Positions 8,245-56,053 are shown, counted from the stretch's first letter. The stretch: 64,000 bases of DNA from Phaeosaccion multiseriatum (GCA_965112735.1 OZ218950.1:3162001-3226000), one strand, 5' to 3'. A program made the numbers and translations. The notes: generated by a model not told the origin, from the letters alone.

Positions 8245-9278
8245 TCACCGTCTTGTTGCGAGGCTCTTGAGGTAGTAACCGCTCTCCGCACTCCGCTGCA
8301 CGCAACAAGAACATTTGGGGTATGTTTGGGAACACGGGTGGGGCTGAGTGCGTCCATATGTGCGTCTCACAACGAAAGGAGGCCACAGAAAGGCAAGCAA
8401 GACCAGTCACAACAAAGGCATCCAGACGGCAGCAGAGCCAGAGCGGCGAGTGGTTATCCACTTTGGTTGGGGAAGGCAGGCAGACTGATGGTGGATATTG
8501 GAGATGAAGACACAACATGGGGAACGGGGCAAGGACAAACAATACGCGACTCAGTGAACCTCTCCGTCCTCACCTGCCTCCCCGCCAAGGCGCTCTTGAC
8601 TCTCTCGGCAAGCGCATCTGCCTGCATGTCCAGCCCGTCTCTCTCCTCGATCAGTATGGGCGTCGGCAGAGTTCCTCCCTTGCCCTCTTGCTGCTGCTCT
8701 GCTTCTGCTACTGCTGAAGCTGCTGCTACGTCGTCCTGAAACATGAAAATGGCTGGTACGCCATGCTGAATGACGTCCAGCTTCACCGCAAGGTCCAGTC
8801 CTAAGCCGGTTGGTGGTACAGGGTACGTGGCAGGAGCAGACAAAGAAAAGGGAGAGAGGGTTCGGGGATTGGGGTCTGCGCGGTGTTCGAGGGGCAAGAA
8901 GGTGGGACAGTGACAGAGACGGAGAGACAGAGACAGAGACAGGCAGGCAGACAGACACACACAGAGAGAGAGAGAGGAGAGAGTCCAACGCCATGAAGCA
9001 TATGCCCTTGTGTCCCTCCGCGCACCTTCTTCGTTGTCAACGTTTATTCTATCAAGCTGTACAAGGTCCTTCACTTGGTCCGCCAGTTGCTGCCACGTGG
9101 CTTCGAACTTTTGACAGGCCCCACACAAGGCACTGTAAAACTCCACCAGGTGCACGCAGTCGTCGTCCAGCACTACCTGCTGGAAGTCAGCGGGGTTGAG
9201 GCTGCCGTGGCCGTCTTCTTGCTCTTGCCCCTTCCCCTCCTGCTCCACCTTCTGCTGCTCCTTCTCCTGCTGCTGCTC

Positions 9279-9314
<36 letters not shown>

Positions 9315-9581
9315 CTCCTCATCGTGCTGCTTCTGACGCTTCTCTATGGCTGCCTGGGCTTCTTCTTCAGCTAATTTTAACCCCCCTTCCCCCCCAAGTT
9401 GTGGTGCCGTTGGTGTCGAGTGCAATTCTTCCTTTGGTCCCTGTCTTCCACTTTCTTGCTGTTGGGGTGGGTTTGAGACTGCCACCCCCTGCCAAACACT
9501 CACCAGGTAGAAACAGAACAAGACACCAACCCCGCAATAGAGCGGTCTGAGGAGGCGTTTCCGTAGGGGCAGCGGCGTCAT
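8245..9581 (-). CDS. Thioredoxin/PDI-fold protein with N-terminal signal anchor. Exons 9581-9026, 8800-8574, probable last exon 8295-8245
   Basis: DFQQVVLDDDCVHLVEFYSALCGACQKFEATWQQLA...RINVD...GVPAIFMF is a thioredoxin fold with a CGAC site and cis-Pro loop. Hydrophobic segment LYCGVGVLFCFYLVSVW, then a Q/E-rich linker. The last exon is less certain. Confidence 0.8.
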
Positions 9582-9989
9582 CGCTCCGTTCTCTGGGTGG
9601 GCGTTGATCAGAATAAGAAGGAGAAGAAGACAGCGCGATTGCAGCAGCGGCATACAAAGAGGGTCAAGGTCGGGTGTGGCGAGGTGATGAAGGGAGAGGG
9701 CTGCCGTGGGATATCGACGTACGCTACCTTTCCTATCGAAGTGGGGAAGAGCGCCACCACCCCCAGAGAGGCTGCTGCTGCTGCTGCTTCTCGGTGCCCC
9801 AGCCGCTGACGGTCTGAGGTATATCCCGTTCGGATAGTTCATTGAGCTTGCATCAATAGCCCTCCGTCCCAGCCCTTACATAGCGCGGGGGAAGCCAGTC
9901 TTGTGTGGGAGGCGGCGGTGGGAAAGAAATGAGAAAAATGGAGAACCAACACGTGCACATCTTCACTATCACCACACCGCTCCAACACA

Positions 9990-10283: not shown

Positions 10284-18037
<7,754 letters not shown>

Positions 18038-19965: not shown

Positions 19966-20261
19966 ATGGGTGACATTGTAAAAAAGAAGCAAGAACCAGG
20001 AGGAAAGAGTGGCAGAGCTTTGGCTTTGTCCGCATGTATATATAACTCACTCTTTTTATTGTTATATATATATATACCAGCAAACACATTCTACCACATC
20101 TAACCCAATGAAAATAGCAGTTTCCCTCAGAACCAACTTGGTATGTTAAGCGCTCGGATGGGAAGTGGGGCGGGGAGGGTGGATCAAGAGGACCTGACCA
20201 AGCCCCAAAGAGGAGCCGCACTGCTGCTCAGCAATTGATTGAGCAACTGAGCTCACAACGC

Positions 20262-20296
<35 letters not shown>

Positions 20297-20311
20297 GACG
20301 TGACTTGGGAC

Positions 20312-23300
20312 TTATCGCGCACGTTCGTAAACTGTCTGCTTCTCGTGGCTGTGGTCCACTGTGAGCACGTTGAGCAGAGCATCAACAGGAGGACCTTCTG
20401 CTGCGGGTGGTGCGGCAGTTTCTGCGGCGGGCTTCTCCTCCTTTGCCGGTTCCTCAGCTGCTGCGGGTGCTTCCTTTGTTGCTGCGCGTGGGGGTGCCGT
20501 GGCTTGTGCCGCAGTCTTCTCCGTGTGCTGACCCTGCTTCGCCGGCTGCCGTCTGTTCACCTTCAGTGCGAGCTGGCCCTCGCCGTCTCCTCCAAGACCT
20601 GCGGCAATAATAGAACAGGCAGGCAAAGAAATAGAGCGAGGTGGAGCAGATAATACGCGCTCAGAGGAAGCTTGACATACATACAACCTGCACAACTCCA
20701 AATCACATCACTCACATTCATACATACACGATCATTCCTCTCTCAGCTCACGCGCTCCAACAGACTCACTCAACCTCTCTCTCACTTCATCTCACCCACT
20801 CACTCACCCACTCACTACTCACAGCCTATCATCCATCCACCGACCAAATTCACTCTGCACCTCACCTACGTAGGACTCCTTCACTCTAACGCCCTCGTGT
20901 TGACGTTGATAGTCAGGGCCTCTCATGTCCACGCGCAACCCCAAACCCGGGTTGTATCCCTCGTCTCCTCCTTCTGTTGCGGTTAATACCATCGAGGAGG
21001 GCGAGGGGGCGAACGACAAAGCAGACAGTTGTCGGGCTTTTAGAAAATGATGGAGAGGGTGACGCATGTGTCATCAGACTCATATACTGGTGTGGGTATT
21101 AGTCTCAGGGGTGTGACCCATATGCTGGTGTGGGTGTCAAGTCTCAGGGCTGTGACTCATATGCTGGTGTGGGTGTTAATTCTCTCATATACTGGTGTGG
21201 GTGTGAAGTATAAGGGGTGTGACTTGTGACTCATATGCTGGTGTGGGTGTTAAGTCTCAGGGCTGTGACTCATATGCAGGTGTGGGTGTCAAGTCTCAGG
21301 GATGTGACTCATATGCAGGTGTGGGTGTCAAGTCTCAGGTCTCAGGGGTGTGACCCATATGCTGGTGTGGGTGTCAAGTCTCAGGGGTGCGCTGGTCTGC
21401 TGGCAAACGAACACGACATGTTTCGCGCAAATACCTCCTCGACCCAAAAGGTCCCAAACACTCACCATACTTGTCAGAGGACAGAGCTACTCGACCCTCA
21501 TGTTGACGCTGATAGTCTGGGCCTCTCATGTCCACATCCAACGGGGTACCGGGCCCGACGAGCACCGGCTCTAGATCTGTTGTGTGGTAATTTCGTGGTT
21601 CCGGCAGACAGGGGGTGGGTAGGAAAGGACCAAGCAGACAATTTTCGGGTTAAGATGAGGAGGGGTGGTTTGTTGGAGGTTTCGACATCAGTCTTAAATT
21701 AAAGGTGCGGTTGCTATTCTCAATGTGCGGTGAGCTCCTACCCTATCGGGTGCAAAGACGAAAACTCAAATCTACCCCAACATACCAAAGCGAGGTCCAC
21801 ATGTCGCCCCCTGAGCACCACAAACAAGGCGGCTACTACTCTACTGTAACAGAAGAGCCTCCCTAAACCCAGGTACACATGTGTCACAGTTGGCGGACGG
21901 TGCGAGCTTCTCCAGATAAAACAAGACTCGACCCTCACTCGTCCATTGACTGTCCTACCACGCACCTGCCCGCACAGGGGACTCCTTGATCCTTCCTTGG
22001 TGCTGACCTTGGTATCCCGGACCCCTACGGTCACAAGGCAAAGCCATACCGGCCCCATCCTGGTAGTCTCCGACTGGATTGGCATTTGAACGGGGAGGAA
22101 CCGGCAGACAAAGCGCAGGAGGGCGAACAAGCATCGATGTCCTTAGAAGGGCGTTTTGGACGGAAGGTGCGTTTTGCTACTCTCAAGGTGCGCTGGCCTG
22201 GCCCACCTTCGTAGAGCACCAAAACGAAGACATGATAACAGCCGCGCGCCCAGAGAAGCCCATACTTCCAATTTCGCCCCGACTCAACCTGCTGCCCACT
22301 AACTAGTCTGTGCTCCACTGTCATCTGGAAGCGTGTGTTTTGACGTGCCTACAGAGTTTTACTGGTGCGGGTGCTAATCTCAAGGGTCTAATAGGGGTGC
22401 CTAAACTAAAACTTCCAACATTTGCCCCAAAAACCCAATCCAATGATCCCAATCCCCCCCCCCCCAAAGCGGCCGCTCACTCCTCTAGCAGACTTTTGCC
22501 CAACCCTTAAGTCCCTGCGTGTCCCATTGCAATTTGCCGCTGGACCCTACCTTTTATACTATATACGGGCAAACGACATCGACCCTTACTGCCACCAAGT
22601 GTTACTGACTGTCCTGACACACACACACAAAATGGCCCATCGTAATATCAACTTACCGTCCATCTGAGGGTAGTAGCGGATCGCGCCTTCGTGTTGACGA
22701 AGACTTGGGACTCCCCGCATGTCGACGGGAAGAGCCACACCGTCGCCCGGTCCCCACAGGGGGTCGACCTCTATTATACGGCACAAATCAGAGGGGGGTG
22801 TGGGCGGTGTGAGTCTCCCTAGATTGGTGACCCCGGCAAAGGTTAAACTTCAAACTCAAATGTTTGCCCCCGAGCCAATCTCCAAAACAGCTGCTGCTAC
22901 GCCACTTCTTTCACTTCTTTCCATACACACTCCCCGTACTCCCAAGCCACTTGTTTTCATAAACACTCGCTAAACGGAAGTGTAGAGTGTCCTAAGTTGG
23001 CGGACCCAACCTTTAGGTGGGCCGTCAAAGTGACTCTGAAGGCCAAGGACCTCACTCACCACCCCCCCCCCCCAAAAAGCCATCAACCACAATCTCAGTG
23101 TTTGCCACTCACCTCCTTCCACAAGCGCAGGGAACGGGATACGAACGTCGAACTTGCGCAGGTACATGGGCCCTCTCTGGTCCACAGGCAACGCCAAGCC
23201 TGGTCCCTCCGCATTCTCTCCATCTGTCGTGGTAATGGCAGATAACGGGGGAGGGAAACGATCAAAAGCGGGCAGATACGGACGGTGGTAAGATAAAAGA

Positions 23301-26300
23301 GCTTGCATGTCTCACACCCTCTACTAGCGTTCCGAGCTGGCGGACGGTGCCTAACTGTGGCGGACGCTGCTTGGGTGGGTGCTGACAGACTGACTCTCTC
23401 TACACCAATGCATGTCAAACCAAACGACCGCTACCCTCCTCACCCCACAAATCGATCTACTGTTGACACTCACAATGCTCCCAAGGGTAAAGCGCGATTC
23501 TGCCCTCATGTTGACGCATGTAATTGGGGCCTCTCTGGTCCACAGCCAAAGCAACGCCATCTCCAGGTCCCCATGCCCACTCTCCTTGATCTTTTGCAGT
23601 ACACATGAGTGGGGGGGTGGCCGACATGCCACACAATGGGGAGCAACAGGACCAAGCAGATAGGCATCGGGTTAAGGTCATCAAGCTCAGGTGTCTCACC
23701 CTCTCCTCCCCATTCACCCACCCACTCACTCACTCACTCAGGCGGGTGGGTAACGGTTACGGTCAATTTGGCGACCTCCACCCCCCAACTCGACTGAATG
23801 TCGACAGCCCACTCTAGCGCCTTCAAAAGAACGTATTTGGACGTGCGTACAGAGTCTACTGGTGCTGTCGTTTAGCCTCAATGGCGTTCTGGTGTATGAA
23901 GTAAGGCTTGAGTCCGATTCTTCGCTCTGTCCAACCCATTCATTACCCCTTACATAAACCCAGGTACTATGTTATGTGTGTGTTCGTTAGTGGGCGGTTC
24001 TGAGCTTCTCCTGATTGGGCAGGTGGTCATTTGACTATGTGGGTGGCAAAAATCGACTAATTGCTCTCTCGGCCCTCACTCAATCTCTCCCTGTCCCACA
24101 ACATTGTGCCCTGCGACTCACTCACCTTCGGTCTCAGGGTAAAAGGCGATTCTACCCTCATGCTGACGCTGATACATAGGGCCTCTCCTGTTCGGAGCAA
24201 GTGCCATGCCGGGCCCGTCCGGTCCATCTCCATCTGTTGCGGCAATGGGTCAGTAGGGGGGGAGCGGCAAGACAACGGGGAAGGGGGACAACCAAGCAGA
24301 CAGACATCGGGGTTTAGATAGGCAGAGCTTCGTTCCCACACTCTCTCTCTGCTCGCCAGTACGCCAGTACGATTGGTACTTGTGTCCTGAGGTGGGGGAA
24401 CGGTGCCATTTTTGCACATTCTCTCACTCACCTAATTCGAACTCGGGGTACACCTTGACGCGGCCCTGATGCTGACGCTGCACCACAGGGCCCTTCCTGT
24501 CAACGCGCACTCCAACGTACTCGGCAAGCGGGGCTTCTGCCTCTTTAAACTCAGCAGGAGCTGATGCCAGCTTGGTGGAATGCTTCCCACTCGCCCGCCG
24601 TCCACTGACCATATTGGCGATTCCGATGCGTGTGTGCCCAGTTGCATACGCGCTGTGCTGACGCTGGTACACATCCGGATGCCTCCTGTTGATCATCAGG
24701 GCCAAGTCAACGGGTGCATCACACACGCACGCACGGGCCTGCATGAGCCGCCGCCGAATGTTCTCGTGCACGCCCGGGCTGCTGGCCAGGATGGCTCGGG
24801 AGGCGAGGTTGAAGGGCTTCATGGACCTCAGATCGGTCACGTTTCCACCTGGGCGCAATTGGGGTCAAGAGAGACAAGACAGACAGACAGCGGAAAGGAC
24901 CGGACAGACAAGGCAAGAAAAACGAGAGAGAGCGTCAGGAAGGAGTAAGTGGGTACTCGTTGCAGGCAAGACACAGCAAGACACAGTCAAAGAGACTAAG
25001 GAGAGCCTCTTGGCGCCACTTGGCAGGTAAGCTCGTAAGCCCCCTTCTCCGCCCCTCTCCTCTCCTCCCACTCCCCTCGCCTTCCAATCTCTCACAACGC
25101 ACCTGCCTCCTCCACCAGCAATGCTCCCGCGGCGCTGTCCCATCTGATGGCAAAGGGGAGGAGAGAAAAGTGAGCAAAGTATAGATATTCACCAGGTTGC
25201 CAAGTCCATTCGAATCATGTCCCCTTCCCCTCCCCCCCCCCCCCCCCACGCGCCAAGTCAGACTTACGAGTTAAGGTCGGGCTCGAAGTAGGCGGAGAGC
25301 CGTCCGCACGCCACCTGTATATGAGAAAAAGAAACAAAAAAAAGAGATGTGTGAGTAAGCGAGCGCCAAGCTTGGGCACTGCTCTTCGCCGGCCAGGCAC
25401 GGGGCTGTGAGCCTGGCATCCCTCCATGCCCGCCTCCTTCCTTCCCTCTCCCGCCTGCATGGTCCATTCTCCCCTCTGCTCTGCTCAACTAGTTCTCGCT
25501 CGTCCCCTCTGATTGGGCTCAGAAAAGCGGGAGAAAGTCACGCACGCACGCACTCGTTCACTCACCCATGTGTACATGATGGTCGCGGAGCCCAAGAGGC
25601 GCATCGTTCGGACGTGCTGGGCGAGAGCTTCAATACCACGCAATGCAGGCTTCACGGCCAGCTGGTTCGGTGGGGATCCGCCCGCCACGACCTTGACAAG
25701 GTTGGGTAGCACGAAGATAGAGGTAAGGGGTAAGGGAGATGAGAGAGAGAGAGAGAGATCTCCGGACGGCACACAACGATCATCGCTCGGCAGCACAGCA
25801 GGTTCACAGAGGGTTCCGCGTCCGTGTGCAGGAAAAGACAGACAGAGAGAGAGAGGGAGAGCTTACCGCATCGCTGAGATCGGTAACGCTGTCCACGGAA
25901 ATGGCGTTTCCGTTGAGGAATGCCCCCCCCCCCTTCTTGGCAGAGAACAGCTCGTCACGGAACGGGTCATACACCACGCCCACGGTATGCTTCCCCTTGT
26001 GAGCCACACCGATGGAGACGCCACACAGGGGAATACTGTGCACAAAGTTTGTCGTACCATCTGCGCCAATTGGGGCAAGACGCAAACGGCAGGTTAGTGC
26101 ATGCATGTACTATCAAACCGCAAGCGTTTGACTTACCAATCGGGTCGAGGATCCAGAGCCATTCATCGTTGATCTTGCCCTGGAGAGCCTTAGAGGAAGC
26201 TTCCATACCGGGCTCGACGCTCTCCTCCCCCAAGATGGAATGGGAGGGGAAGGCCTCTGATATTTTCTTCTCAATAACCTCCTGGCACAGCCCGTCCGCC

Positions 26301-26593
26301 TGGGTAAGCAAGTCCTTCGTGTTGAACTTTGTCTCCACAACGTCCCCCCCGAGCTCTTTACGGAGGACCTCTCCAGCAGCTTTTGCTGCCGCCGTTGCCA
26401 CCTTCAACACCTTGTCGACCTCAGCCGCGTCCGGCCCCTCCATTGAACTCGCGCCGCTCATTCTACTCTTAACGTTGCGGTTAGAGAATGGCGTTGCTGC
26501 CGCGCGGGGGCCTTGCAACACGAACGCAGAGCCAGAGCCCACGCACCCGCTCAGGATCATGAGAAGAACGGCGGTCCTCGACGCCATGGCCAT
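20312..26593 (-). CDS. Plastid-targeted inositol monophosphatase (IMPase/SuhB/IMPL1-like) fused to a C-terminal array of ~10 novel ~37-aa repeats. 14 exons: 26593-26137, 26060-25867, 25691-25566, 25314-25268, 25143-25103, 24848-24432, 24233-24126, 23590-23474, 23223-23113, 22770-22657, 22073-21966, 21576-21466, 20973-20866, 20598-20312
   Basis: IMPase motifs DLLTQAD, ILGEE, WILDPIDGTTNFVH, GVVYDPFRDELF, RLLGSA, WVACGRLSAYFE..LNSWDSAAGALLVEEAGGNVTD. The signal peptide ends GSA|FV (ASAFAP-like) and is followed by an S/R/A-rich transit peptide. Exon 6 continues without a stop into the repeat units. The catalytic part is high confidence; inclusion of all repeat exons is inferred from splice sites and phase. 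Confidence 0.85.
21078..21390. repeat. Minisatellite, ~8 copies of a ~39-bp unit (actcatatgctggtgtgggtgtcaagtctcaggg(g/c)tgtg), intronic
   Basis: Head-to-tail copies without spacers, between repeat exons 21466-21576 and 20866-20973. Confidence 0.93.
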
Positions 26594-27208
26594 CTCTTTA
26601 TTGGATAATTATACCAATTCGATCCTTTGTATGACGAATGCGCCCCTCTCGAAGGTCAAACTGAAAACTATTTTTTTGGGCAAACGGGAAAGATTACGTA
26701 ACACCCTTACATAAACGTTTGCGTTGCCAAAATTCGTCTCGGCTTACATTGGGGACAGGGGCGAGCGCCACGCCACACACACGACACCATTGCACGCGTT
26801 TCAGCCTGCGCAAACGTACTGCGAGATTCCTTGCGAAGTGGAAGGTCTGGGGAGAAAGTGGTGGGGAGGGGGGTGGGGGGTAAGAGAGAGGGGGAGAGTT
26901 GTCACGACGCCTTGCAAGGCCATCCCTCAGTAGGAGAAGAGTGCAGCAGAGAGTGGTAAGTTGTTAGAGGATAGGGTTGGTTCTTCCTCGAAACTTCCCT
27001 CCCTCGTCTCTTCATCGTTTTCCAACACTCTGGGGGGAAAACCTTCCTTTCTCACCCCCATCCCACAGCACTGGGGACTGTATGGGTCAGCACCTGGTCT
27101 TCTCATCTCACTCCCCTCGCCCCCCTCCGTCCTCCTCCCGTATTCGACAGACTTGGAAACCGCAAACACCCAAATTGGCTGAAACCACGTAAGCGTGGTG
27201 CAGAGGGG

Positions 27209-30200
27209 ATGAAGCGCCAGAGACCCCAACGCAGCAGCAGCGGTAGCGGGAGCAATGCCAAGCAGCACGCAGCTAAAAAGGCCCGAGGACAGAGGGCTCC
27301 CGTGGACGTAAGGAGAAGAGGCAGCTCTGGCGCCAAAGCAGCTGCTGTGCCTTCCATAAAGGTGACTGAGGATGGGGGTGTTGATGACAGTAGTGCCGCA
27401 AACGGCGTGAGTAAGGACGTGGACTTTGGGGCTTGGCTCGAAGCCAAAACCAGCGAACCGGAGCAGGGTTTCAGCACCACAAACGGAGGTGAATCCGGGG
27501 CCGGGGGAGTGCCCCTGCCCACTTCTGCATCTGTCCATGGGATACCAAACGGGAACAGCGTGGCCTCCTTGCCTGGTGGGGGGACAGGGTTGCCTTCGAG
27601 CTTGCTCGGGGTGACGGGAGGTAATGCCAGCGCCGGCAGTGCGAGCGAGGAGGAGACTTCTCCGCTGGCCAACCTATTTGCGTTGGGGGGGGGGGGAACA
27701 GGAGGAGGGGGTGGAACATCAGGTACAGGGGCCCTACCCACCTCAACGCTGAGGCGCAAGCCATTGGGGACCCTAGCGTGGGGCATGGGGATCGTTCCAC
27801 ACGCCAGCGAAGCCCTGCTGGTCAAGGGGAAGGCGCAATCATCGGGAGACGAGGCAGGAGAGGCAGAAAAGGGGACTGCAGAGGGAGAGGGGGAGGGGGG
27901 GGGGGACCTGAAGAGAGGCAAAGACGGGGCGAGAAATGCTGCAAATCGGCGGTCTAGTGGTGGAAAGGACTCGTCTTCCGCCAAAGGAAAGGACAGCCGC
28001 AACACCAGCACCAGCAACGCCAGCGGTAGGCACCCCGAAAAGGGAGGAAAGGGGGCGAAGCATGAGGCCGGGAGGAGGAGCAGCAGCAGCGGTAGTAGTA
28101 GCAGCAGCAGCAGGAAGAGAAATCGTCAGCAAAGAGGCAAGGATGAGAGGAGGAGTAGCAGCATGGACGGGGAGAAGGACAAGAAAGTGGTGGAGAGGAG
28201 AAAAAGCCAAAGCACGCGTGACCCCCGCGACAGGTCAGCCAACAAGAGCAGCGGCAGCGGCAGCGGCAGCGGCAGCGGTCGCGACAAGAAGGCCGCGGTA
28301 GGAAATGGCGAGAAAAGCGTCAACCCCGATACGCCCTCCAAGCGGCAGAGCGCAGGGAAGGGTAGGGACGAGGACAGGAGCAGGGGCAGGCGCCGAGATA
28401 GCATCAGTAGGAGCGCCAGCCCGCCCCCGACGAGGCGCGGAGCAGGGGGCAGAGAAAGGTGCGCGAGCATGTACACACACACACACACGTGCATACACCA
28501 CACCTCTTACCTCTTCACCAAATCATGGGGTTTTGTCTTTCCAAGGGGAGCGATTCATCTTACGCGTCTGAACACCCCCTGTCTACGCCCCCCTGCCTAC
28601 GCCGGTCCCTTGTCTCTCTTTCTTCGTGCAGGAACAGCCGCAGCCGGAGTGAGGACCGGCCCAGGGGGAGGGCGAGCAGCAGGGGGAGGAGTCGGGGGGG
28701 AGGGGACAGCAGGAGTAGGAGCGACAGTAGAGGTCGACGGAAGGTGAGTGGGCAGGCGGTGAATGGATATGGCTGGCCGATACAGGCAATCCCCCTTCTC
28801 ACTTGGAATACAAAGGCATTTTTTGTTTAAAGTCTCCTCTTCCTTCTGGCCACGCAATCGGTTCTATTATTACAACAAACTCACTCGATTCCTCTGCTCG
28901 TTGCTCTATTGCATGGGAGTAGGTTGGCGACGGTAAGACTGGCAATGCCGGCCGGGGGGCTGGTAGGGGGTCGACTGCTGGCCGCAATGGCTCACGACGA
29001 AGAAGCGACGATAGCAGTAAAGAGGATGGCAAGGCTCGCGGGGGCGGGCAGGACAAGAGGAGAGGTAGTAGTGACGTCCGTCGGGGAAGGAGCGACAGTG
29101 TAAGTAAGGAAGACTCGGCACAGAGACGAAGAAGTGTAAGCAGGAGTCGAAGCAGGGGAGGGGGCAGGAGTAGGAGTAGGAGCCAAGGAAGGGGGTCTGG
29201 GAAGAAAGGCGGCAAAAGCGCCAGCCCAAGCAGGAGAGGGGGCTCGGAAAAGGGTGGAGCTAGAGAAGCAAGGGGCAACGGAAGGGGGCGGGGTGTATCT
29301 GCCGACAGACGGCGACGCGCGAGTCGGAGCAGGAGCAGGGGTAGGAGTCAGAGTAGGAGCAAAAGCAGGCGCGGCAACAGCAACAGGGCGGGGAGAGGGA
29401 GAGGGAGCGGCGTGGTGAATAGTCGCTCTCGAGCAGGAACAGGGAGGGGTGGCGGGAGCAGAAGTAAGAGCCGCAGCAGAGGACGAAGGAGCACAAGCCG
29501 AAGCAAGAGTAAGGAGGACCGGCTCCAGTGGAAGGGTGGAAATGCAGGCACCCGCGGGGGCAGCAGCAAGAGGCGCAGCAGCAGGAGCTGCAGCAATGAA
29601 AAGCGAAACACCTCCTCAAAGTCAAAGTCTGGTGGTGGGCAACAGCGTGGGAGAAGGAGTGCGAGCCCGAGCAGAACGACGGGCAAGAAAGAGGACAGCA
29701 GGAAGGGGAATATGAGGGGGGGGGGCAGCAAGGCCGCCGCAAGCAGGGACAGTAGGAGTCCAAGCAGGGGAAGGGCAGCAAGTCGGAGCAGAAGTCGGAG
29801 CTTGGGGGGGAGGGGCGCCCAGAGAGCAAAGGAGCGAAGCAGCAGGAGCAGGAGTAGGAGCAGAGGGGGAAGAGGAAAGGCGCCTCTCACCGGTAGCCGG
29901 GCGAGAGCACCGAACAGGGACAGCAGAAGTCGCAGTCGGAGCAGAAGTAGGCAGCAGCCTTCCAAGTGGAAGGGGGGCAATGCGGGTGCAGCAGGGCGAG
30001 GTAGCAGTCGGAGCCGGAGCAGGAGCAACGGACGGGAAGGCGGGGGAAGGCGAAGGGAGAGGGAGACCTCACGTCCTGCTGCTTCTGCCGCTGCGGATAG
30101 ACGGAAGGGAGTAAGCAGGAGCCGTTCACGCAGTCGAAGCCGGGACCGGAAAGGCAGGGGAAATTCCGCTGCTGCTAGTCGGAGGCGAACTCGAAACAGC

Positions 30201-31787
30201 AGGAGTAGAAGCAGGAGTATCGGGAGTAGGAGTGGTGGAAGGGGGAGAGCAACAGCAGCGGGTGGGGCGTCTGGTGGTGGTGGCAGGGACCGGAAAAGGA
30301 ATCGGAGCAGGAGCAGGAGCAGGAGCAGGAGTCGCAGCGCAAGCAGGGGCCGAAGACAAGGAGGAGGAAGGGGAGCAAGAGGAGGAGGGAGAGGGCGGGA
30401 GGGAGGTGCAGAGGCCTTCGGGAGAGGCAAGCAGCAGCAGGGTAGTAGCAGCAGCACCACGGCAGGGAAGGGCGGCAATGTGGTGGGTATGCGTCTCATG
30501 GTGACGGAAGTGGACAGGGAGAAGAGCAAGAAGATCCTCCAGAGCAATGTGGAGAGGGTGTTCACCAGGCACGGCTGCGTCGAGCATGTGGACGTGAGCG
30601 CGGAGCTCGGGTCGGTTTGCTTCGTGCGGATGAGGACCAGGGAAGACGGAGAGAAGGTGAGGGTGACTTTTTTGTGGAAAGAAGAAGGAGGGGGGGGGAA
30701 GAGAAAGGGGGGTTCTCTTCTCGCTGGTGGGCAAGTCTGTCTGTCTCTTTCTCATCCTCGGCCTACACCCTCCTCCCTCCCTTTCTTCCTCTTTCAGGCC
30801 ATCCGAATGATGGACAATCGCTTTCAGAAGCTGCTGTGTGCTGGAGACAGCAATAGCACGGACTCTGTGCCGAACCTTCGTGTTTCCGAGGTGAGATACT
30901 CGGCCTACAAGAAGGCAATGGAGAAGGCCGACCTCACCCCTGAGGCCCACTTGGAGAACCCTGACCGGCCCGACGAGGAGGGCAACAGTAGCAGCAACAG
31001 CGGCGGTGAAGGCAGCAAAGAGGAGCAGCTGGCGGTGGCTGCCGGTGCTGTTGCAGAGACTGGGGCTGAAGAGGGAGGATCGGGAGATGGGGGCAGGGAG
31101 GAAGGCAACGGGTGTGCAGAGGAAAGCCGCGAAGAGGGGAGGGAGACCAAAAAGAAGAAGAGGGGGGGGCGCAAGAGCAGTAGCGACGTGGGCAATGGTG
31201 CCAAGGAGGCAGACGGCGGTGTGAGCGAGCAAGGGGTGGAGGAGGGCAGCAACAGCAGCAGCAGCAGCGGCGGCGGCAGCAACGGCAGAAACGGCAACGG
31301 CGGTGGCAAGAAGCGGTCATGGACAGAGGCTATTGAGGGAACCACGCGAAGGCAGAGAGAGGCGGGCCTGATGGACGGGATACGACTCCGCGTGGGGGGG
31401 CTTGACTCGGCCAAGGAGGGCATTGAGGCGGAGCTGAGCAAGACCTTTGGAGCGTACGGCGAGGTGCTGCACATTGACTATCTTCCCGATCGCAGCATGG
31501 CGTTTGTGCGTTTGGACAAGCGGGCCGGTGGGGATCGGGCCACCAAGGAGCTGCAGGGGCATTGCACGTCTGCGCTGTGTGCGCGCACCAAGGGCTTATC
31601 GGTACGAGAGACGAGCTTCGAGGAGTATCTGGAGCGGATGGACAAGTGGGCCGGGGGAGGAGGGGGGGCTGCGGGTACGGAGGGACTGCATCAACCGGAG
31701 GAGCTGTTTGTGGATGACGAGAGTCGAAGGATGGGCCCGGAGGAGGGCAAGAGGGCGTACCAGCATTCAACTTCTCGAGCGGATTGA
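27209..31787 (+). CDS. Large RS/RG-rich RNA-binding protein with two C-terminal RRM domains. Exons 27209-28458, 28632-28743, 28923-30656, 30798-31787
   Basis: Extensive RSRSRS tracts. RRM1: RLMVTEVD...VERVFTRHGCVEHVDV...CFVRM...EK|AIRMMD. RRM2: RLRVGGLD...ELSKTFGAYGEVLHIDY...AFVRL...ATKELQG. Splice phases are consistent. Confidence 0.8.
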
Positions 31788-36622: not shown

Positions 36623-55755
<19,133 letters not shown>

Positions 55756-56053
55756 GTTGTCCTCACTTTCACAAGAGGTACTTAAAAAAAAGTAATCAAC
55801 CACCCTCCTTGTCTTTTTCCTTCAAGCAACTTGCTCTCTCTCGTTGTTTAAAACAACAACCGTCATGGCTCAAGAAATCAAGACTCCGAGATCCTCATGC
55901 CCTTCGCTTCTTTCTCATCATTGCTTCCTGCCTTGGCATGCATCCTGGCTTTCTCCTTGGCTACAAGAGGAAGCGAATTTGTGTTTCATCCGTGTCATCG
56001 TCACAGATGGCTACCCTAGCACCAACGCGCTATTCATCCCTCCTTATGCCTGG

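What the first reader, a model, noticed from the sequence alone, without database searches (positions are those of the whole stretch)
20312..24848. Plastid inositol monophosphatase fused to a one-exon-per-unit array of an unrecognised ~37-aa repeat
Seen in sequence: exon 6 (24848-24432) finishes the IMPase fold (GGNVTD...PFNLASRAILASSPGVHENIRRRL) and runs on without a stop into two repeat units, DLALMINRRHPDVYQRQH and VGVRVDRKGPVVQRQHQGRVKVYP. Seven small exons follow, each with AG/GT boundaries, phase 1 at both ends, a length divisible by three, and exactly one unit. 24233-24126: DGDGPDGPGMALAPNRRGPMYQRQHEGRIAFYPETE. 23590-23474: DQGEWAWGPGDGVALAVDQRGPNYMRQHEGRIALYPWEH. 23223-23113: GENAEGPGLALPVDQRGPMYLRKFDVRIPFPALVEG. 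22770-22657: EVDPLWGPGDGVALPVDMRGVPSLRQHEGAIRYYPQMD. 22073-21966: GDYQDGAGMALPCDRRGPGYQGQHQGRIKESPVRA. 21576-21466: DLEPVLVGPGTPLDVDMRGPDYQRQHEGRVALSSDKY. 20973-20866: EGGDEGYNPGLGLRVDMRGPDYQRQHEGVRVKESYV. The last exon carries a tenth unit (LALKVNRRQPAKQGQH) and an A/E/P-rich tail. Consensus: GxGxALxVDxRGPxYxRQHEGR. Established knowledge: IMPase/SuhB/IMPL1 enzymes are normally single-domain, and I know of no family matching this repeat. Inference: a conserved charged/aromatic core separated by G/P/D-rich spacers in a plastid protein resembles the multivalent sticker-spacer design of pyrenoid Rubisco linkers (EPYC1, PYCO1), though without their motifs. It could tether a sugar or inositol phosphatase to Rubisco or another plastid scaffold. 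The symmetric exons would also allow valency to be tuned by exon skipping or shuffling.
Basis: partly seen in the sequence, partly recalled or inferred. Interest (0 to 1): 0.92.

Follow-up and report, generated by a model that had tools for sequence, protein, structure and literature searches.

The report
Plastid phosphatase with orphan ten-repeat tail
An unidentified brown-lineage alga has a gene that joins an ordinary-looking chloroplast sugar/inositol phosphatase to ten copies of a ~36-residue motif found nowhere else in the databases searched, one copy per small exon; the tail probably docks or clusters the enzyme, but on what is unknown and no RNA data confirm the splicing.

Summary
A 14-exon minus-strand model (26593-20312) has AG/GT at every intron and gives a 781-aa protein. 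It comprises a signal peptide ending GSA|F, an IMPase/SuhB-type domain with both metal-site signatures, then ten ~36-aa units. Two units lie in the exon that completes the IMPase domain, with no stop between. Seven units each fill one phase 1-1 exon, and one unit opens the last exon.

An HMM of the units finds exactly ten in the window (39-77 bits; next best about 4). The unit cores differ far more at synonymous than non-synonymous sites (pS 0.73, pN 0.28). The introns are unrelated, so the array is old and constrained.

The repeat is an orphan. There were no Pfam hits, none in a profile search of 1.84 billion proteins, none in JGI metagenomes, and no relevant paper for the motif strings.

The pyrenoid/Rubisco-linker reading is untested and partly contradicted. 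The repeat region has pI 6.2 (PYCO1 is 10.03), carries no known sticker motif, and AlphaFold2 predicts no helix.

All sequencing runs found look genomic, so splicing of exons 7-14 is inferred. The scan has noted only this same stretch before, not the motif on other DNA.

Best reading: a multivalent docking or clustering tail on an active plastid phosphatase, partner unknown.

The parts
20312..26593 (-). Whole gene model: 14 exons, 2346-nt CDS, 781 aa
   Evidence: All introns are GT..AG and the frame stays open throughout. Genomic contigs of four runs agree with the sequence.
26137..26593 (-). Exon 1: start ATG, signal peptide (hydrophobic core, GSA|F), transit-peptide-like stretch, and the IMPase N-terminal part with the DPIDGT metal-site motif
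   Evidence: Pfam PF00459 at E 2.2e-16 and 60.6 bits on residues 59-152. PDB IMPase/SuhB hits. Signature match WILDPIDGTTNFVH.
25867..26060 (-). Exon 2: IMPase core
   Evidence: NCBIfam inositol-1-monophosphatase at 53 bits. PDB SuhB 3luz at E 1.4e-13, colinear with chain residues 94-150.
25566..25691 (-). Exon 3: IMPase middle part
   Evidence: In frame with AG/GT boundaries. No family hit of its own.
25268..25314 (-). Exon 4: 47 nt, ends just before the second IMPase signature
   Evidence: The signature WDSAAGALLVEEAGG appears only after exons 4, 5 and 6 are joined.
25103..25143 (-). Exon 5: 41 nt, holds WDSAAGALLVEEA
24432..24848 (-). Exon 6: completes the IMPase signature and C-terminus, then continues without a stop into unit 1 (24723-24649) and unit 2 (24537-24436)
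   Evidence: Single open frame of 138 codons. HMM scores 39.4 and 56.2 bits.
24126..24233 (-). Exon 7: repeat unit 3, phase 1-1, 108 nt
   Evidence: HMM 76.9 bits.
23474..23590 (-). Exon 8: repeat unit 4, phase 1-1, 117 nt
   Evidence: HMM 72.1 bits.
23113..23223 (-). Exon 9: repeat unit 5, phase 1-1, 111 nt. Its core is degenerate (RKFDV in place of RQHEG).
   Evidence: HMM 59.3 bits.
22657..22770 (-). Exon 10: repeat unit 6, phase 1-1, 114 nt
   Evidence: HMM 63.3 bits.
21966..22073 (-). Exon 11: repeat unit 7, phase 1-1, 108 nt
   Evidence: HMM 66.0 bits.
21466..21576 (-). Exon 12: repeat unit 8, phase 1-1, 111 nt
   Evidence: HMM 63.3 bits.
20866..20973 (-). Exon 13: repeat unit 9, phase 1-1, 108 nt
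   Evidence: HMM 62.0 bits.
20312..20598 (-). Exon 14: repeat unit 10 (about 20599-20501, weaker), a 70-aa A/E/P/K-rich acidic tail ending in a short hydrophobic stretch, then TAA
   Evidence: HMM 48.9 bits. Tail pI 5.05.

Best explanation
This is most likely one real nuclear gene of an ochrophyte alga. It encodes a plastid-targeted, catalytically competent IMPase/SuhB-type sugar- or inositol-phosphate phosphatase with a lineage-specific C-terminal extension of ten ~36-residue units.

Each unit has a conserved, mildly basic, aromatic core of about 20-25 residues (roughly G-x-A-L-x-V-D-x-R-G-P-x-Y-x-R-Q-H-E-G-R-I). The cores are separated by short acidic spacers of 10-14 residues, rich in G, P, D and E.

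I read the extension as a multivalent array of short binding motifs. IMPases are typically dimers (established knowledge), so a dimer would present about twenty motifs. That would suffice to dock the enzyme on an oligomeric or repeated plastid partner, or to cluster it through basic-core/acidic-spacer self-association.

Shown here: the gene structure, the IMPase identity with an intact metal site, the direct in-exon fusion to two units, the constraint on the unit core, and the absence of relatives.

Inferred: splicing of exons 7-14, plastid location, disorder of the tail, and the docking or clustering role. The partner is unknown.
For: - Gene model with 13 GT..AG introns and an open 781-aa frame.
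- The IMPase signature WDSAAGALLVEEAGG is rebuilt only by joining exons 4, 5 and 6. This ties exon 6, and so units 1 and 2, to the enzyme.
- Pfam PF00459 at 60.6 bits. Exons 1 and 2 map colinearly onto solved IMPase/SuhB chains.
- There are exactly ten units at 39-77 bits against a background of about 4 bits.
- The period is regular at 35-39 residues for units 2-10. Cores carry a net charge of about 0 to +4 and spacers about -1 to -5.
- Across exons 7-13 the 19-codon cores have pS 0.73 against pN 0.28, the introns share no meaningful similarity, and units are only 23-61% identical. The array is therefore old and kept by selection on the peptide.
- AlphaFold2 on one unit, with the ten units as alignment, gives no secondary structure (pLDDT 63, pTM 0.13), consistent with a motif that does not fold alone.
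- No homologue was found in 1.84 billion representative proteins. Known pyrenoid linkers are similarly confined to one species or to closely related species (PMC10288592, PMC11570498).
Against: - There is no transcript evidence. Every run that holds the locus looks genomic.
- GC3 of exons 7-14 is 0.58, lower than the IMPase exons (0.73) and only a little above intron GC (0.53).
- The hydrophobic fraction of the repeat region is 0.23, not as low as in typical disordered linkers. A structure formed by several units together is not excluded, because only a single unit and exon 6 could be folded.
- No partner, localisation or orthologue data exist.
Confidence: 0.5

Rival explanations
1. Pyrenoid reading. 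The units are Rubisco-binding or pyrenoid-targeting stickers. The protein would be a client, or a CcmM-like enzyme-plus-linker hybrid, that places a sugar-phosphate phosphatase in the Rubisco matrix.
For: - Probable plastid targeting (GSA|F after a hydrophobic core).
- Ten regularly spaced motifs with a 35-39-residue period, inside the 20-120-residue window used by FLIPPer (PMC11570498).
- Orphan status like EPYC1 and PYCO1 (PMC10288592).
- Unchecked notes from this scan report other plastid repeat proteins in this genome, including one with a carbonic-anhydrase-like domain.
Against: - The repeat region has pI 6.2 and net charge -5, whereas PYCO1 is basic (pI 10.03; PMC10288592).
- It has no KWSP, no GTGYNP (a single GYNP only) and no [DN]W[RK]xx[LIVA] motif.
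- No helix is predicted in a unit.
- The scan's notes give other stickers for this genome (for example KSFGRGAYRS and YGRGWG), which differ from this motif, and also describe a shikimate enzyme with a repeat tail. The habit therefore looks general to plastid enzymes rather than specific to carbon fixation (unchecked AI notes).
- It is not known whether this alga has a pyrenoid.
Confidence: 0.12
2. Structured repeat domain. Several units pack together into a beta-rich solenoid or similar fold that binds a ligand such as a phosphorylated sugar, a lipid headgroup or a metal, through the conserved Arg/His/Tyr/Glu.
For: - Unit length is very regular and hydrophobic positions recur (A-L-x-V, Y, I/V-x-x-Y-P).
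- The hydrophobic fraction is 0.23.
- Spacers are only 10-14 residues.
- One unit per symmetric exon is typical of modular domains (established knowledge).
Against: - AlphaFold2 of a unit shows no strand or helix.
- Spacers are rich in G, P, D and E and vary by insertions and deletions.
- Units 1 and 2 lie 63 residues apart.
- No structural or sequence relative was found.
Confidence: 0.15
3. Gene-model artefact or partial fusion. Only exon 6 is used (IMPase plus two units, with a stop three codons into intron 6). Exons 7-14 would then belong to another transcript, be used only occasionally, or be decaying.
For: - No RNA evidence exists.
- If intron 6 is retained, a stop follows at the third codon.
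- GC3 is lower in exons 7-14.
- Unit 5 has a degenerate core.
Against: - Seven consecutive exons keep an open frame in the one phase that fits, with mostly GTGAGT-type donors and AG acceptors.
- pN is well below pS in the cores.
- A separate repeat-only gene would need its own start codon and targeting signal, and the model provides neither for exons 7-14. No other ORF of 200 aa or more lies over exons 7-14.
- The same motif occurs inside exon 6.
Confidence: 0.15
4. Neutral lineage-specific expansion: a tandemly duplicated exon drifting as a functionless disordered tail.
For: The repeat is an orphan. The scan's notes suggest this genome has many proteins rich in repeats or low-complexity sequence.
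Against: Synonymous sites are near saturation while the core peptide is retained (pS 0.73, pN 0.28). The introns have diverged beyond recognition. Frame and splice sites are intact in all eight repeat-bearing exons.
Confidence: 0.08

Closest known systems
IMPase/SuhB family (Pfam PF00459; e.g. human IMPA1/IMPA2, E. coli SuhB, plant plastid IMPL1)
   Same: The N-terminal 265-residue domain matches the family HMM and solved IMPase/SuhB chains colinearly. It keeps both metal-site signatures.
   Different: The matched solved chains are single-domain proteins of about 254-299 residues. This protein carries about 460 extra C-terminal residues. The sub-family and substrate are unresolved: all per-exon scores, which cannot reach whole-protein thresholds, fall far below the NCBIfam equivalog cut-offs.
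PYCO1, the Rubisco linker of Phaeodactylum (PMC10288592)
   Same: Both are plastid-targeted ochrophyte-lineage repeat proteins with short conserved aromatic/Arg/Gly motifs between flexible spacers. Neither has homologues outside its own species.
   Different: PYCO1 has six ~80-residue repeats, is mostly disordered, has pI 10.03 and uses KWSPRGGS and GTGYNP stickers. This protein has ~36-residue repeats, pI 6.2, a different motif, and a folded enzyme at the N-terminus.
EPYC1 / CsLinker class, as defined by the FLIPPer criteria (PMC11570498; PMC13655443)
   Same: Repeats lie at a spacing within 20-120 residues, and valency is 10 against 5-6.
   Different: Those linkers are largely disordered throughout and have helical stickers. 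Here no helix is predicted and half the protein is a globular enzyme.
CcmM of beta-carboxysomes (from established knowledge)
   Same: The architecture is analogous: an N-terminal oligomeric enzyme or enzyme-like domain followed by a C-terminal array of repeated binding modules.
   Different: CcmM has a gamma-carbonic-anhydrase domain and folded ~85-residue RbcS-like modules. There is no sequence or fold relation here.

Membership tests
IMPase family (PF00459) | Match to the family HMM above Pfam's gathering score | tested here: met
   Exon 1 alone scores 60.6 bits against a cut-off of 27. Exon 2 scores 53 bits to NCBIfam inositol-1-monophosphatase.
IMPase family (PF00459) | Metal-binding signature 1 (D-P-[LIVM]-D-[SG]-[ST]) | tested here: met
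   WILDPIDGTTNFVH at residues 147-160 fits the PROSITE-style pattern, which I recalled from memory.
IMPase family (PF00459) | Signature 2 (W-D-x-[AC]-[GSA]-[GSAPV]...[GH]-[GA]) | tested here: met
   WDSAAGALLVEEAGG at residues 276-290, assembled across exons 4, 5 and 6.
IMPase family (PF00459) | Assignment to a sub-family or substrate (IMPase/SuhB, HisN histidinol-phosphatase, CysQ, FBPase/IMPase) | tested here: inconclusive
   Per-exon scores: HisN 34.5 + 46.2, SuhB-type 21.7 + 53, FBPase/IMPase 52 bits. All are far below the whole-protein equivalog cut-offs of 264-332 bits. The best PDB hits are SuhB and IMPA.
Pyrenoid Rubisco linkers (EPYC1/CsLinker/PYCO1 functional class) | Protein largely disordered | tested here: not met
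   Residues 59-323 form a folded IMPase domain. Only the C-terminal ~460 residues could be disordered, and the AlphaFold2 result for them is low-confidence and without structure.
Pyrenoid Rubisco linkers (EPYC1/CsLinker/PYCO1 functional class) | Repeats spaced 20-120 residues apart (FLIPPer; PMC11570498) | tested here: met
   Periods are 35-39 residues, and 63 between units 1 and 2.
Pyrenoid Rubisco linkers (EPYC1/CsLinker/PYCO1 functional class) | Repeating structured (helical) sticker elements | tested here: inconclusive
   AlphaFold2 on one unit with a 10-row alignment gives no secondary structure at pLDDT 63. Folding on binding cannot be excluded.
Pyrenoid Rubisco linkers (EPYC1/CsLinker/PYCO1 functional class) | Strongly basic (PYCO1 pI 10.03; PMC10288592) | tested here: not met
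   The repeat region has pI 6.24, with 48 K+R against 53 D+E. The whole protein has pI 6.01.
Pyrenoid Rubisco linkers (EPYC1/CsLinker/PYCO1 functional class) | Known sticker sequence (KWSPRGGS, GTGYNP, or [DN]W[RK]xx[LIVA]) | tested here: not met
   None is present. There is one GYNP at residue 656.
Pyrenoid Rubisco linkers (EPYC1/CsLinker/PYCO1 functional class) | Binds Rubisco, localises to the pyrenoid and drives condensation | not testable with these tools
   This needs localisation, pull-down and in vitro droplet assays.
Any described protein repeat or domain family | Significant sequence match of the unit | tested here: not met
   Pfam gave no hit at E <= 1 on the units tested (exon 6 and exons 7-8). 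The profile search of 1.84 billion representatives gave 0 hits at E <= 0.001. PDB gave nothing significant. The Atlas gave no hit above 0.78.

The most novel reading that the evidence does not exclude
The RGPxYxRQHEGR unit could be this alga's own Rubisco- or pyrenoid-matrix-binding sticker. The protein would then be a eukaryotic, CcmM-like hybrid: an active sugar-phosphate phosphatase that is itself a ten-valent (twenty-valent as a dimer) matrix linker or client. Valency could be tuned by skipping symmetric exons. This would be the first enzyme-linker fusion known in a red-type plastid.
Probability: 0.1. Interest if true: 0.85.

Novelty: new variant of a known kind. Interest (0 to 1): 0.5.

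Why it matters
If the model is right, a housekeeping-type plastid phosphatase has gained a selectively maintained ten-fold array of a peptide motif with no detectable relative in 1.84 billion representative proteins. Multivalent motif arrays are how Rubisco linkers and other condensate scaffolds work, and such scaffolds are usually invisible to homology searches. A clean, regularly spaced, exon-modular array attached to an assayable enzyme is therefore a convenient handle. The motif can be used as bait to find its partner, and the enzyme reports where the tail takes it.

The one-unit-per-symmetric-exon layout is also a tidy example of exon duplication building valency, and it allows isoforms with different unit numbers. 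Unchecked notes from this scan describe other plastid enzymes with repeat tails in the same genome. If those hold, the alga may use such tails widely to organise stromal metabolism.

Tried and rejected
1. RNA support. Both run searches returned only runs that look genomic, from one organism. Reads laid on 20300-26200 gave intron-containing contigs. The only joints were three non-canonical ones around 24890-25228, with 18-21-letter sides in poly-purine/poly-G sequence where depth spikes. I take these as repeat artefacts, not splicing.
2. The profile search of the ten units against 1.84 billion representatives gave 0 hits.
3. The search for related loci on JGI metagenomes. A four-unit alignment gave 48 pattern matches, none a relative. 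The IMPase part of exon 1 gave 393 pattern matches, none a relative.
4. The search for homologous proteins with IMPase residues 55-152 of exon 1 gave 58 candidates, none significant. The length window of 84-266 aa excludes full-length plastid IMPases. I therefore could not fetch orthologous loci to see whether relatives carry unannotated repeat exons.
5. ESM Atlas. Exon 6 gave only unnamed bacterial clusters at 0.78, which is noise. Exon 1 gave IMPase clusters, the best mostly eukaryotic with Bacillariophyta commonest, at 0.88.
6. AlphaFold2 of exon 6 as a single sequence gave pLDDT 36, which is uninformative. The spliced 388-residue array has no reference, so it was neither folded nor typed.
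7. A literature search for the motif strings gave one irrelevant hit. A search for 'inositol monophosphatase' with 'pyrenoid' returned four papers whose titles and abstracts suggest no link; they were not read.
8. Golgi PAP-phosphatase (gPAPP-like) reading of the signal-bearing IMPase: rejected. The best matches are SuhB/IMPA-type, and the residue after the predicted cleavage site is Phe, as in ochrophyte plastid signals.
9. Polyprotein precursor (euglenid or dinoflagellate style): rejected. The units are too short and no conserved cleavage linker is present.

Full report
**Observation**

All seven small exons (24233-24126, 23590-23474, 23223-23113, 22770-22657, 22073-21966, 21576-21466, 20973-20866) have these properties:
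- an AG immediately upstream and a GT immediately downstream, with GTGAGT the commonest donor;
- a length of 108-117 nt, divisible by three;
- a single open frame, offset by two bases, that gives one copy of the motif.

I added five upstream exons that I delimited from the sequence (26593-26137, 26060-25867, 25691-25566, 25314-25268, 25143-25103), plus exon 6 (24848-24432) and a last exon (20598-20312). The result is a 2346-nt CDS of 781 aa with GT..AG at all 13 introns. Exons 7-13 all start and end in phase 1. Reading through any of introns 6-13 meets a stop after 3-48 codons.

**Is exon 6 really part of the phosphatase gene?**

Yes.
- Exon 1 matches Pfam Inositol_P (PF00459) at 60.6 bits against a cut-off of 27.
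- Exons 1 and 2 map colinearly onto solved IMPase/SuhB chains. Exon 1 covers chain residues up to about 100, and exon 2 covers about 83-179 depending on the chain, for example 94-150 in 3luz.
- Exon 2 scores 46-53 bits to the NCBIfam inositol-1-monophosphatase, FBPase/IMPase and HisN models.
- Both classical IMPase signatures are present: WILDPIDGTTNFVH and WDSAAGALLVEEAGG (the patterns were recalled from memory).

The second signature exists only after exons 4, 5 and 6 are spliced. Its last Gly-Gly spans the exon 5/6 junction. Exon 6 then runs on in the same frame, without a stop, through two repeat units. Fusion of the enzyme to at least two units therefore does not depend on any further splicing.

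**The repeat**

An alignment of the ten units gives the consensus G-x-x-x-x-G-P-G-x-A-L-x-V-D-R-R-G-P-x-Y-Q-R-Q-H-E-G-R-I-x-x-x-P. Positions L, R, P, Q and H are conserved in at least 90% of units.
- An HMM built from the alignment, run with all filters off on every six-frame ORF piece of the window, finds exactly these ten units at 39-77 bits. Nothing else scores above about 4 bits.
- The period is 35-39 residues for units 2-10, and 63 between units 1 and 2.
- Cores carry about 0 to +4 net charge. The 10-14-residue spacers are rich in G, P, D and E and carry -1 to -5. The tail is therefore a blocky polyampholyte.
- Overall the repeat region has pI 6.24.

The units are only 23-61% identical to each other. 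Within the 19-codon core of exons 7-13, pS is 0.73 against pN 0.28. The introns share only three 21-40-nt matches. The array therefore arose by old exon duplications, and the peptide core has been kept by selection while synonymous sites and introns diverged.

GC3 of exons 7-14 is 0.58. This is lower than in exons 1-6 (0.71-0.73) and only a little above intron GC (0.53). It is a mild caution.

**Targeting**

The N-terminus has a short charged start, a hydrophobic core, and small residues at -3 and -1 (G-S-A) followed by Phe. About 30 residues rich in S, T, A and R follow before the IMPase domain begins near residue 59. This fits the ASAFAP-type bipartite signal of ochrophyte, haptophyte and cryptophyte plastid proteins (established knowledge). 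No predictor was available.

The best Atlas cluster for exon 1 is an IMPase cluster that is mostly eukaryotic, with Bacillariophyta the commonest phylum (score 0.88). This agrees with a stramenopile origin.

**Is the repeat known?**

No.
- Pfam finds nothing in the units tested at E <= 1.
- PDB finds nothing significant.
- The Atlas finds nothing above 0.78.
- A profile search of the ten units against 1.84 billion representative proteins finds nothing at E <= 0.001. Single units score about 60 bits against their own model, so even a close one-unit relative should have passed.
- Two scans of JGI metagenome contigs found no relative of either the units or the IMPase part.
- The motif strings occur in no relevant paper.

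**Structure**

AlphaFold2 on one unit, with the other nine as alignment, gives no helix or strand (pLDDT 63, pTM 0.13). Exon 6 folded alone is uninformative (pLDDT 36). A fold that needs several units is therefore not excluded, and the hydrophobic fraction of 0.23 leaves room for it.

**Expression**

Both searches for sequencing runs returned only runs of one organism, and their contigs include the introns. Laying four of them on 20300-26200 (5901 letters, within the operators' limit) showed contigs that match without differences. One 3.9-kb contig covers exon 5 and exons 6-12 with their introns. No canonical spliced joint appeared. The DNA is therefore confirmed, but splicing of exons 7-14 remains inferred.

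**Comparison with Rubisco linkers**

- PYCO1 has six ~80-residue repeats, is mostly disordered, has pI 10.03, uses KWSPRGGS and GTGYNP stickers, and has no homologue outside its species (PMC10288592).
- EPYC1 and CsLinker have 5-6 helical stickers. The FLIPPer criteria are: largely disordered, repeating structured elements, and a spacing of 20-120 residues (PMC11570498; PMC13655443).
- The present tail shares the spacing criterion, the multivalency and the orphan status.
- It differs in being near neutral and in lacking all known sticker sequences (one stray GYNP only). It also lacks a predicted helix and hangs on a 265-residue enzyme.
- In architecture the closest analogue is the cyanobacterial CcmM (an enzyme-like domain plus binding repeats), but the two share no sequence or fold relation.

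**Context from the scan's own notes (unchecked)**

The notes describe this genome as that of an unidentified ochrophyte. They list several other plastid-targeted repeat proteins:
- a carbonic-anhydrase-like domain with about 60 repeats;
- a trio of giant repeat proteins;
- a shikimate enzyme with a ~700-residue repeat region;
- proteins with KSFGRGAYRS or YGRGWG stickers.

None of the motifs quoted matches this one. If real, these notes suggest a lineage habit of adding multivalent tails to plastid proteins in general. That makes a Rubisco-specific role for this tail less, not more, likely.

**Verdict**

The gene is most likely real: I put a single fused gene at about 0.8, and the fusion to two units is certain from the sequence. 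The best mechanistic reading is a multivalent docking or clustering tail on an active plastid IMPase-type phosphatase (0.5). The Rubisco/pyrenoid reading stays possible but is a minority view (about 0.1). Interest is moderate. The case is clean, constrained, orphan and experimentally tractable, but it has no functional or transcript evidence, and orphan repeat tails are not rare in algal genomes.

Noticed in passing
window 21077-21389 (intron 12 of the gene): A minisatellite of about 39 bp x 8 copies (76% matches), with 46- and 85-bp super-periods. Short-read contigs of all four runs break here.
   Followed up: partly
window 20265-20294: A perfect (CT)15 / (GA)15 microsatellite about 18 nt downstream of the TAA stop, in the presumed 3' UTR. 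An AATAAA lies near 20050-20060.
   Followed up: no
window 25050-25260 and 25732-25865: Introns 2, 4 and 5 hold poly-G, poly-purine and (CT)n tracts. Read depth spikes up to about 700 there. They produce non-canonical 'joints' with 18-21-letter sides, which look like repeat artefacts rather than splicing.
   Followed up: partly
window 47133-50273, 50242-51864, 53218-55803, 43227-45677 (all minus strand): Very long ORFs (540-1046 aa) with no Pfam hit. They are full of homopolymer runs (E, G, Q, S). They could be exons of large low-complexity proteins or GC-driven spurious ORFs.
   Followed up: partly
window 10284-11993 (-), 8454-9842 (-), 29412-31787 (+): Neighbouring ORFs carry IQ, B-box and WW domains, a thioredoxin domain, and an RRM respectively. 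These are ordinary eukaryotic nuclear genes with no evident functional link to the phosphatase.
   Followed up: no
window 10839-10929 (-): ARAGORN, run in bacterial mode, calls a 91-nt tRNA-Trp (CCA) inside the IQ/WW ORF region. It could be an intron-containing nuclear tRNA or a false call.
   Followed up: no
window 25920-26714 (+): A 264-aa ORF lies antisense to exon 1 of the phosphatase gene. It is most likely a by-product of GC-rich coding sequence.
   Followed up: no
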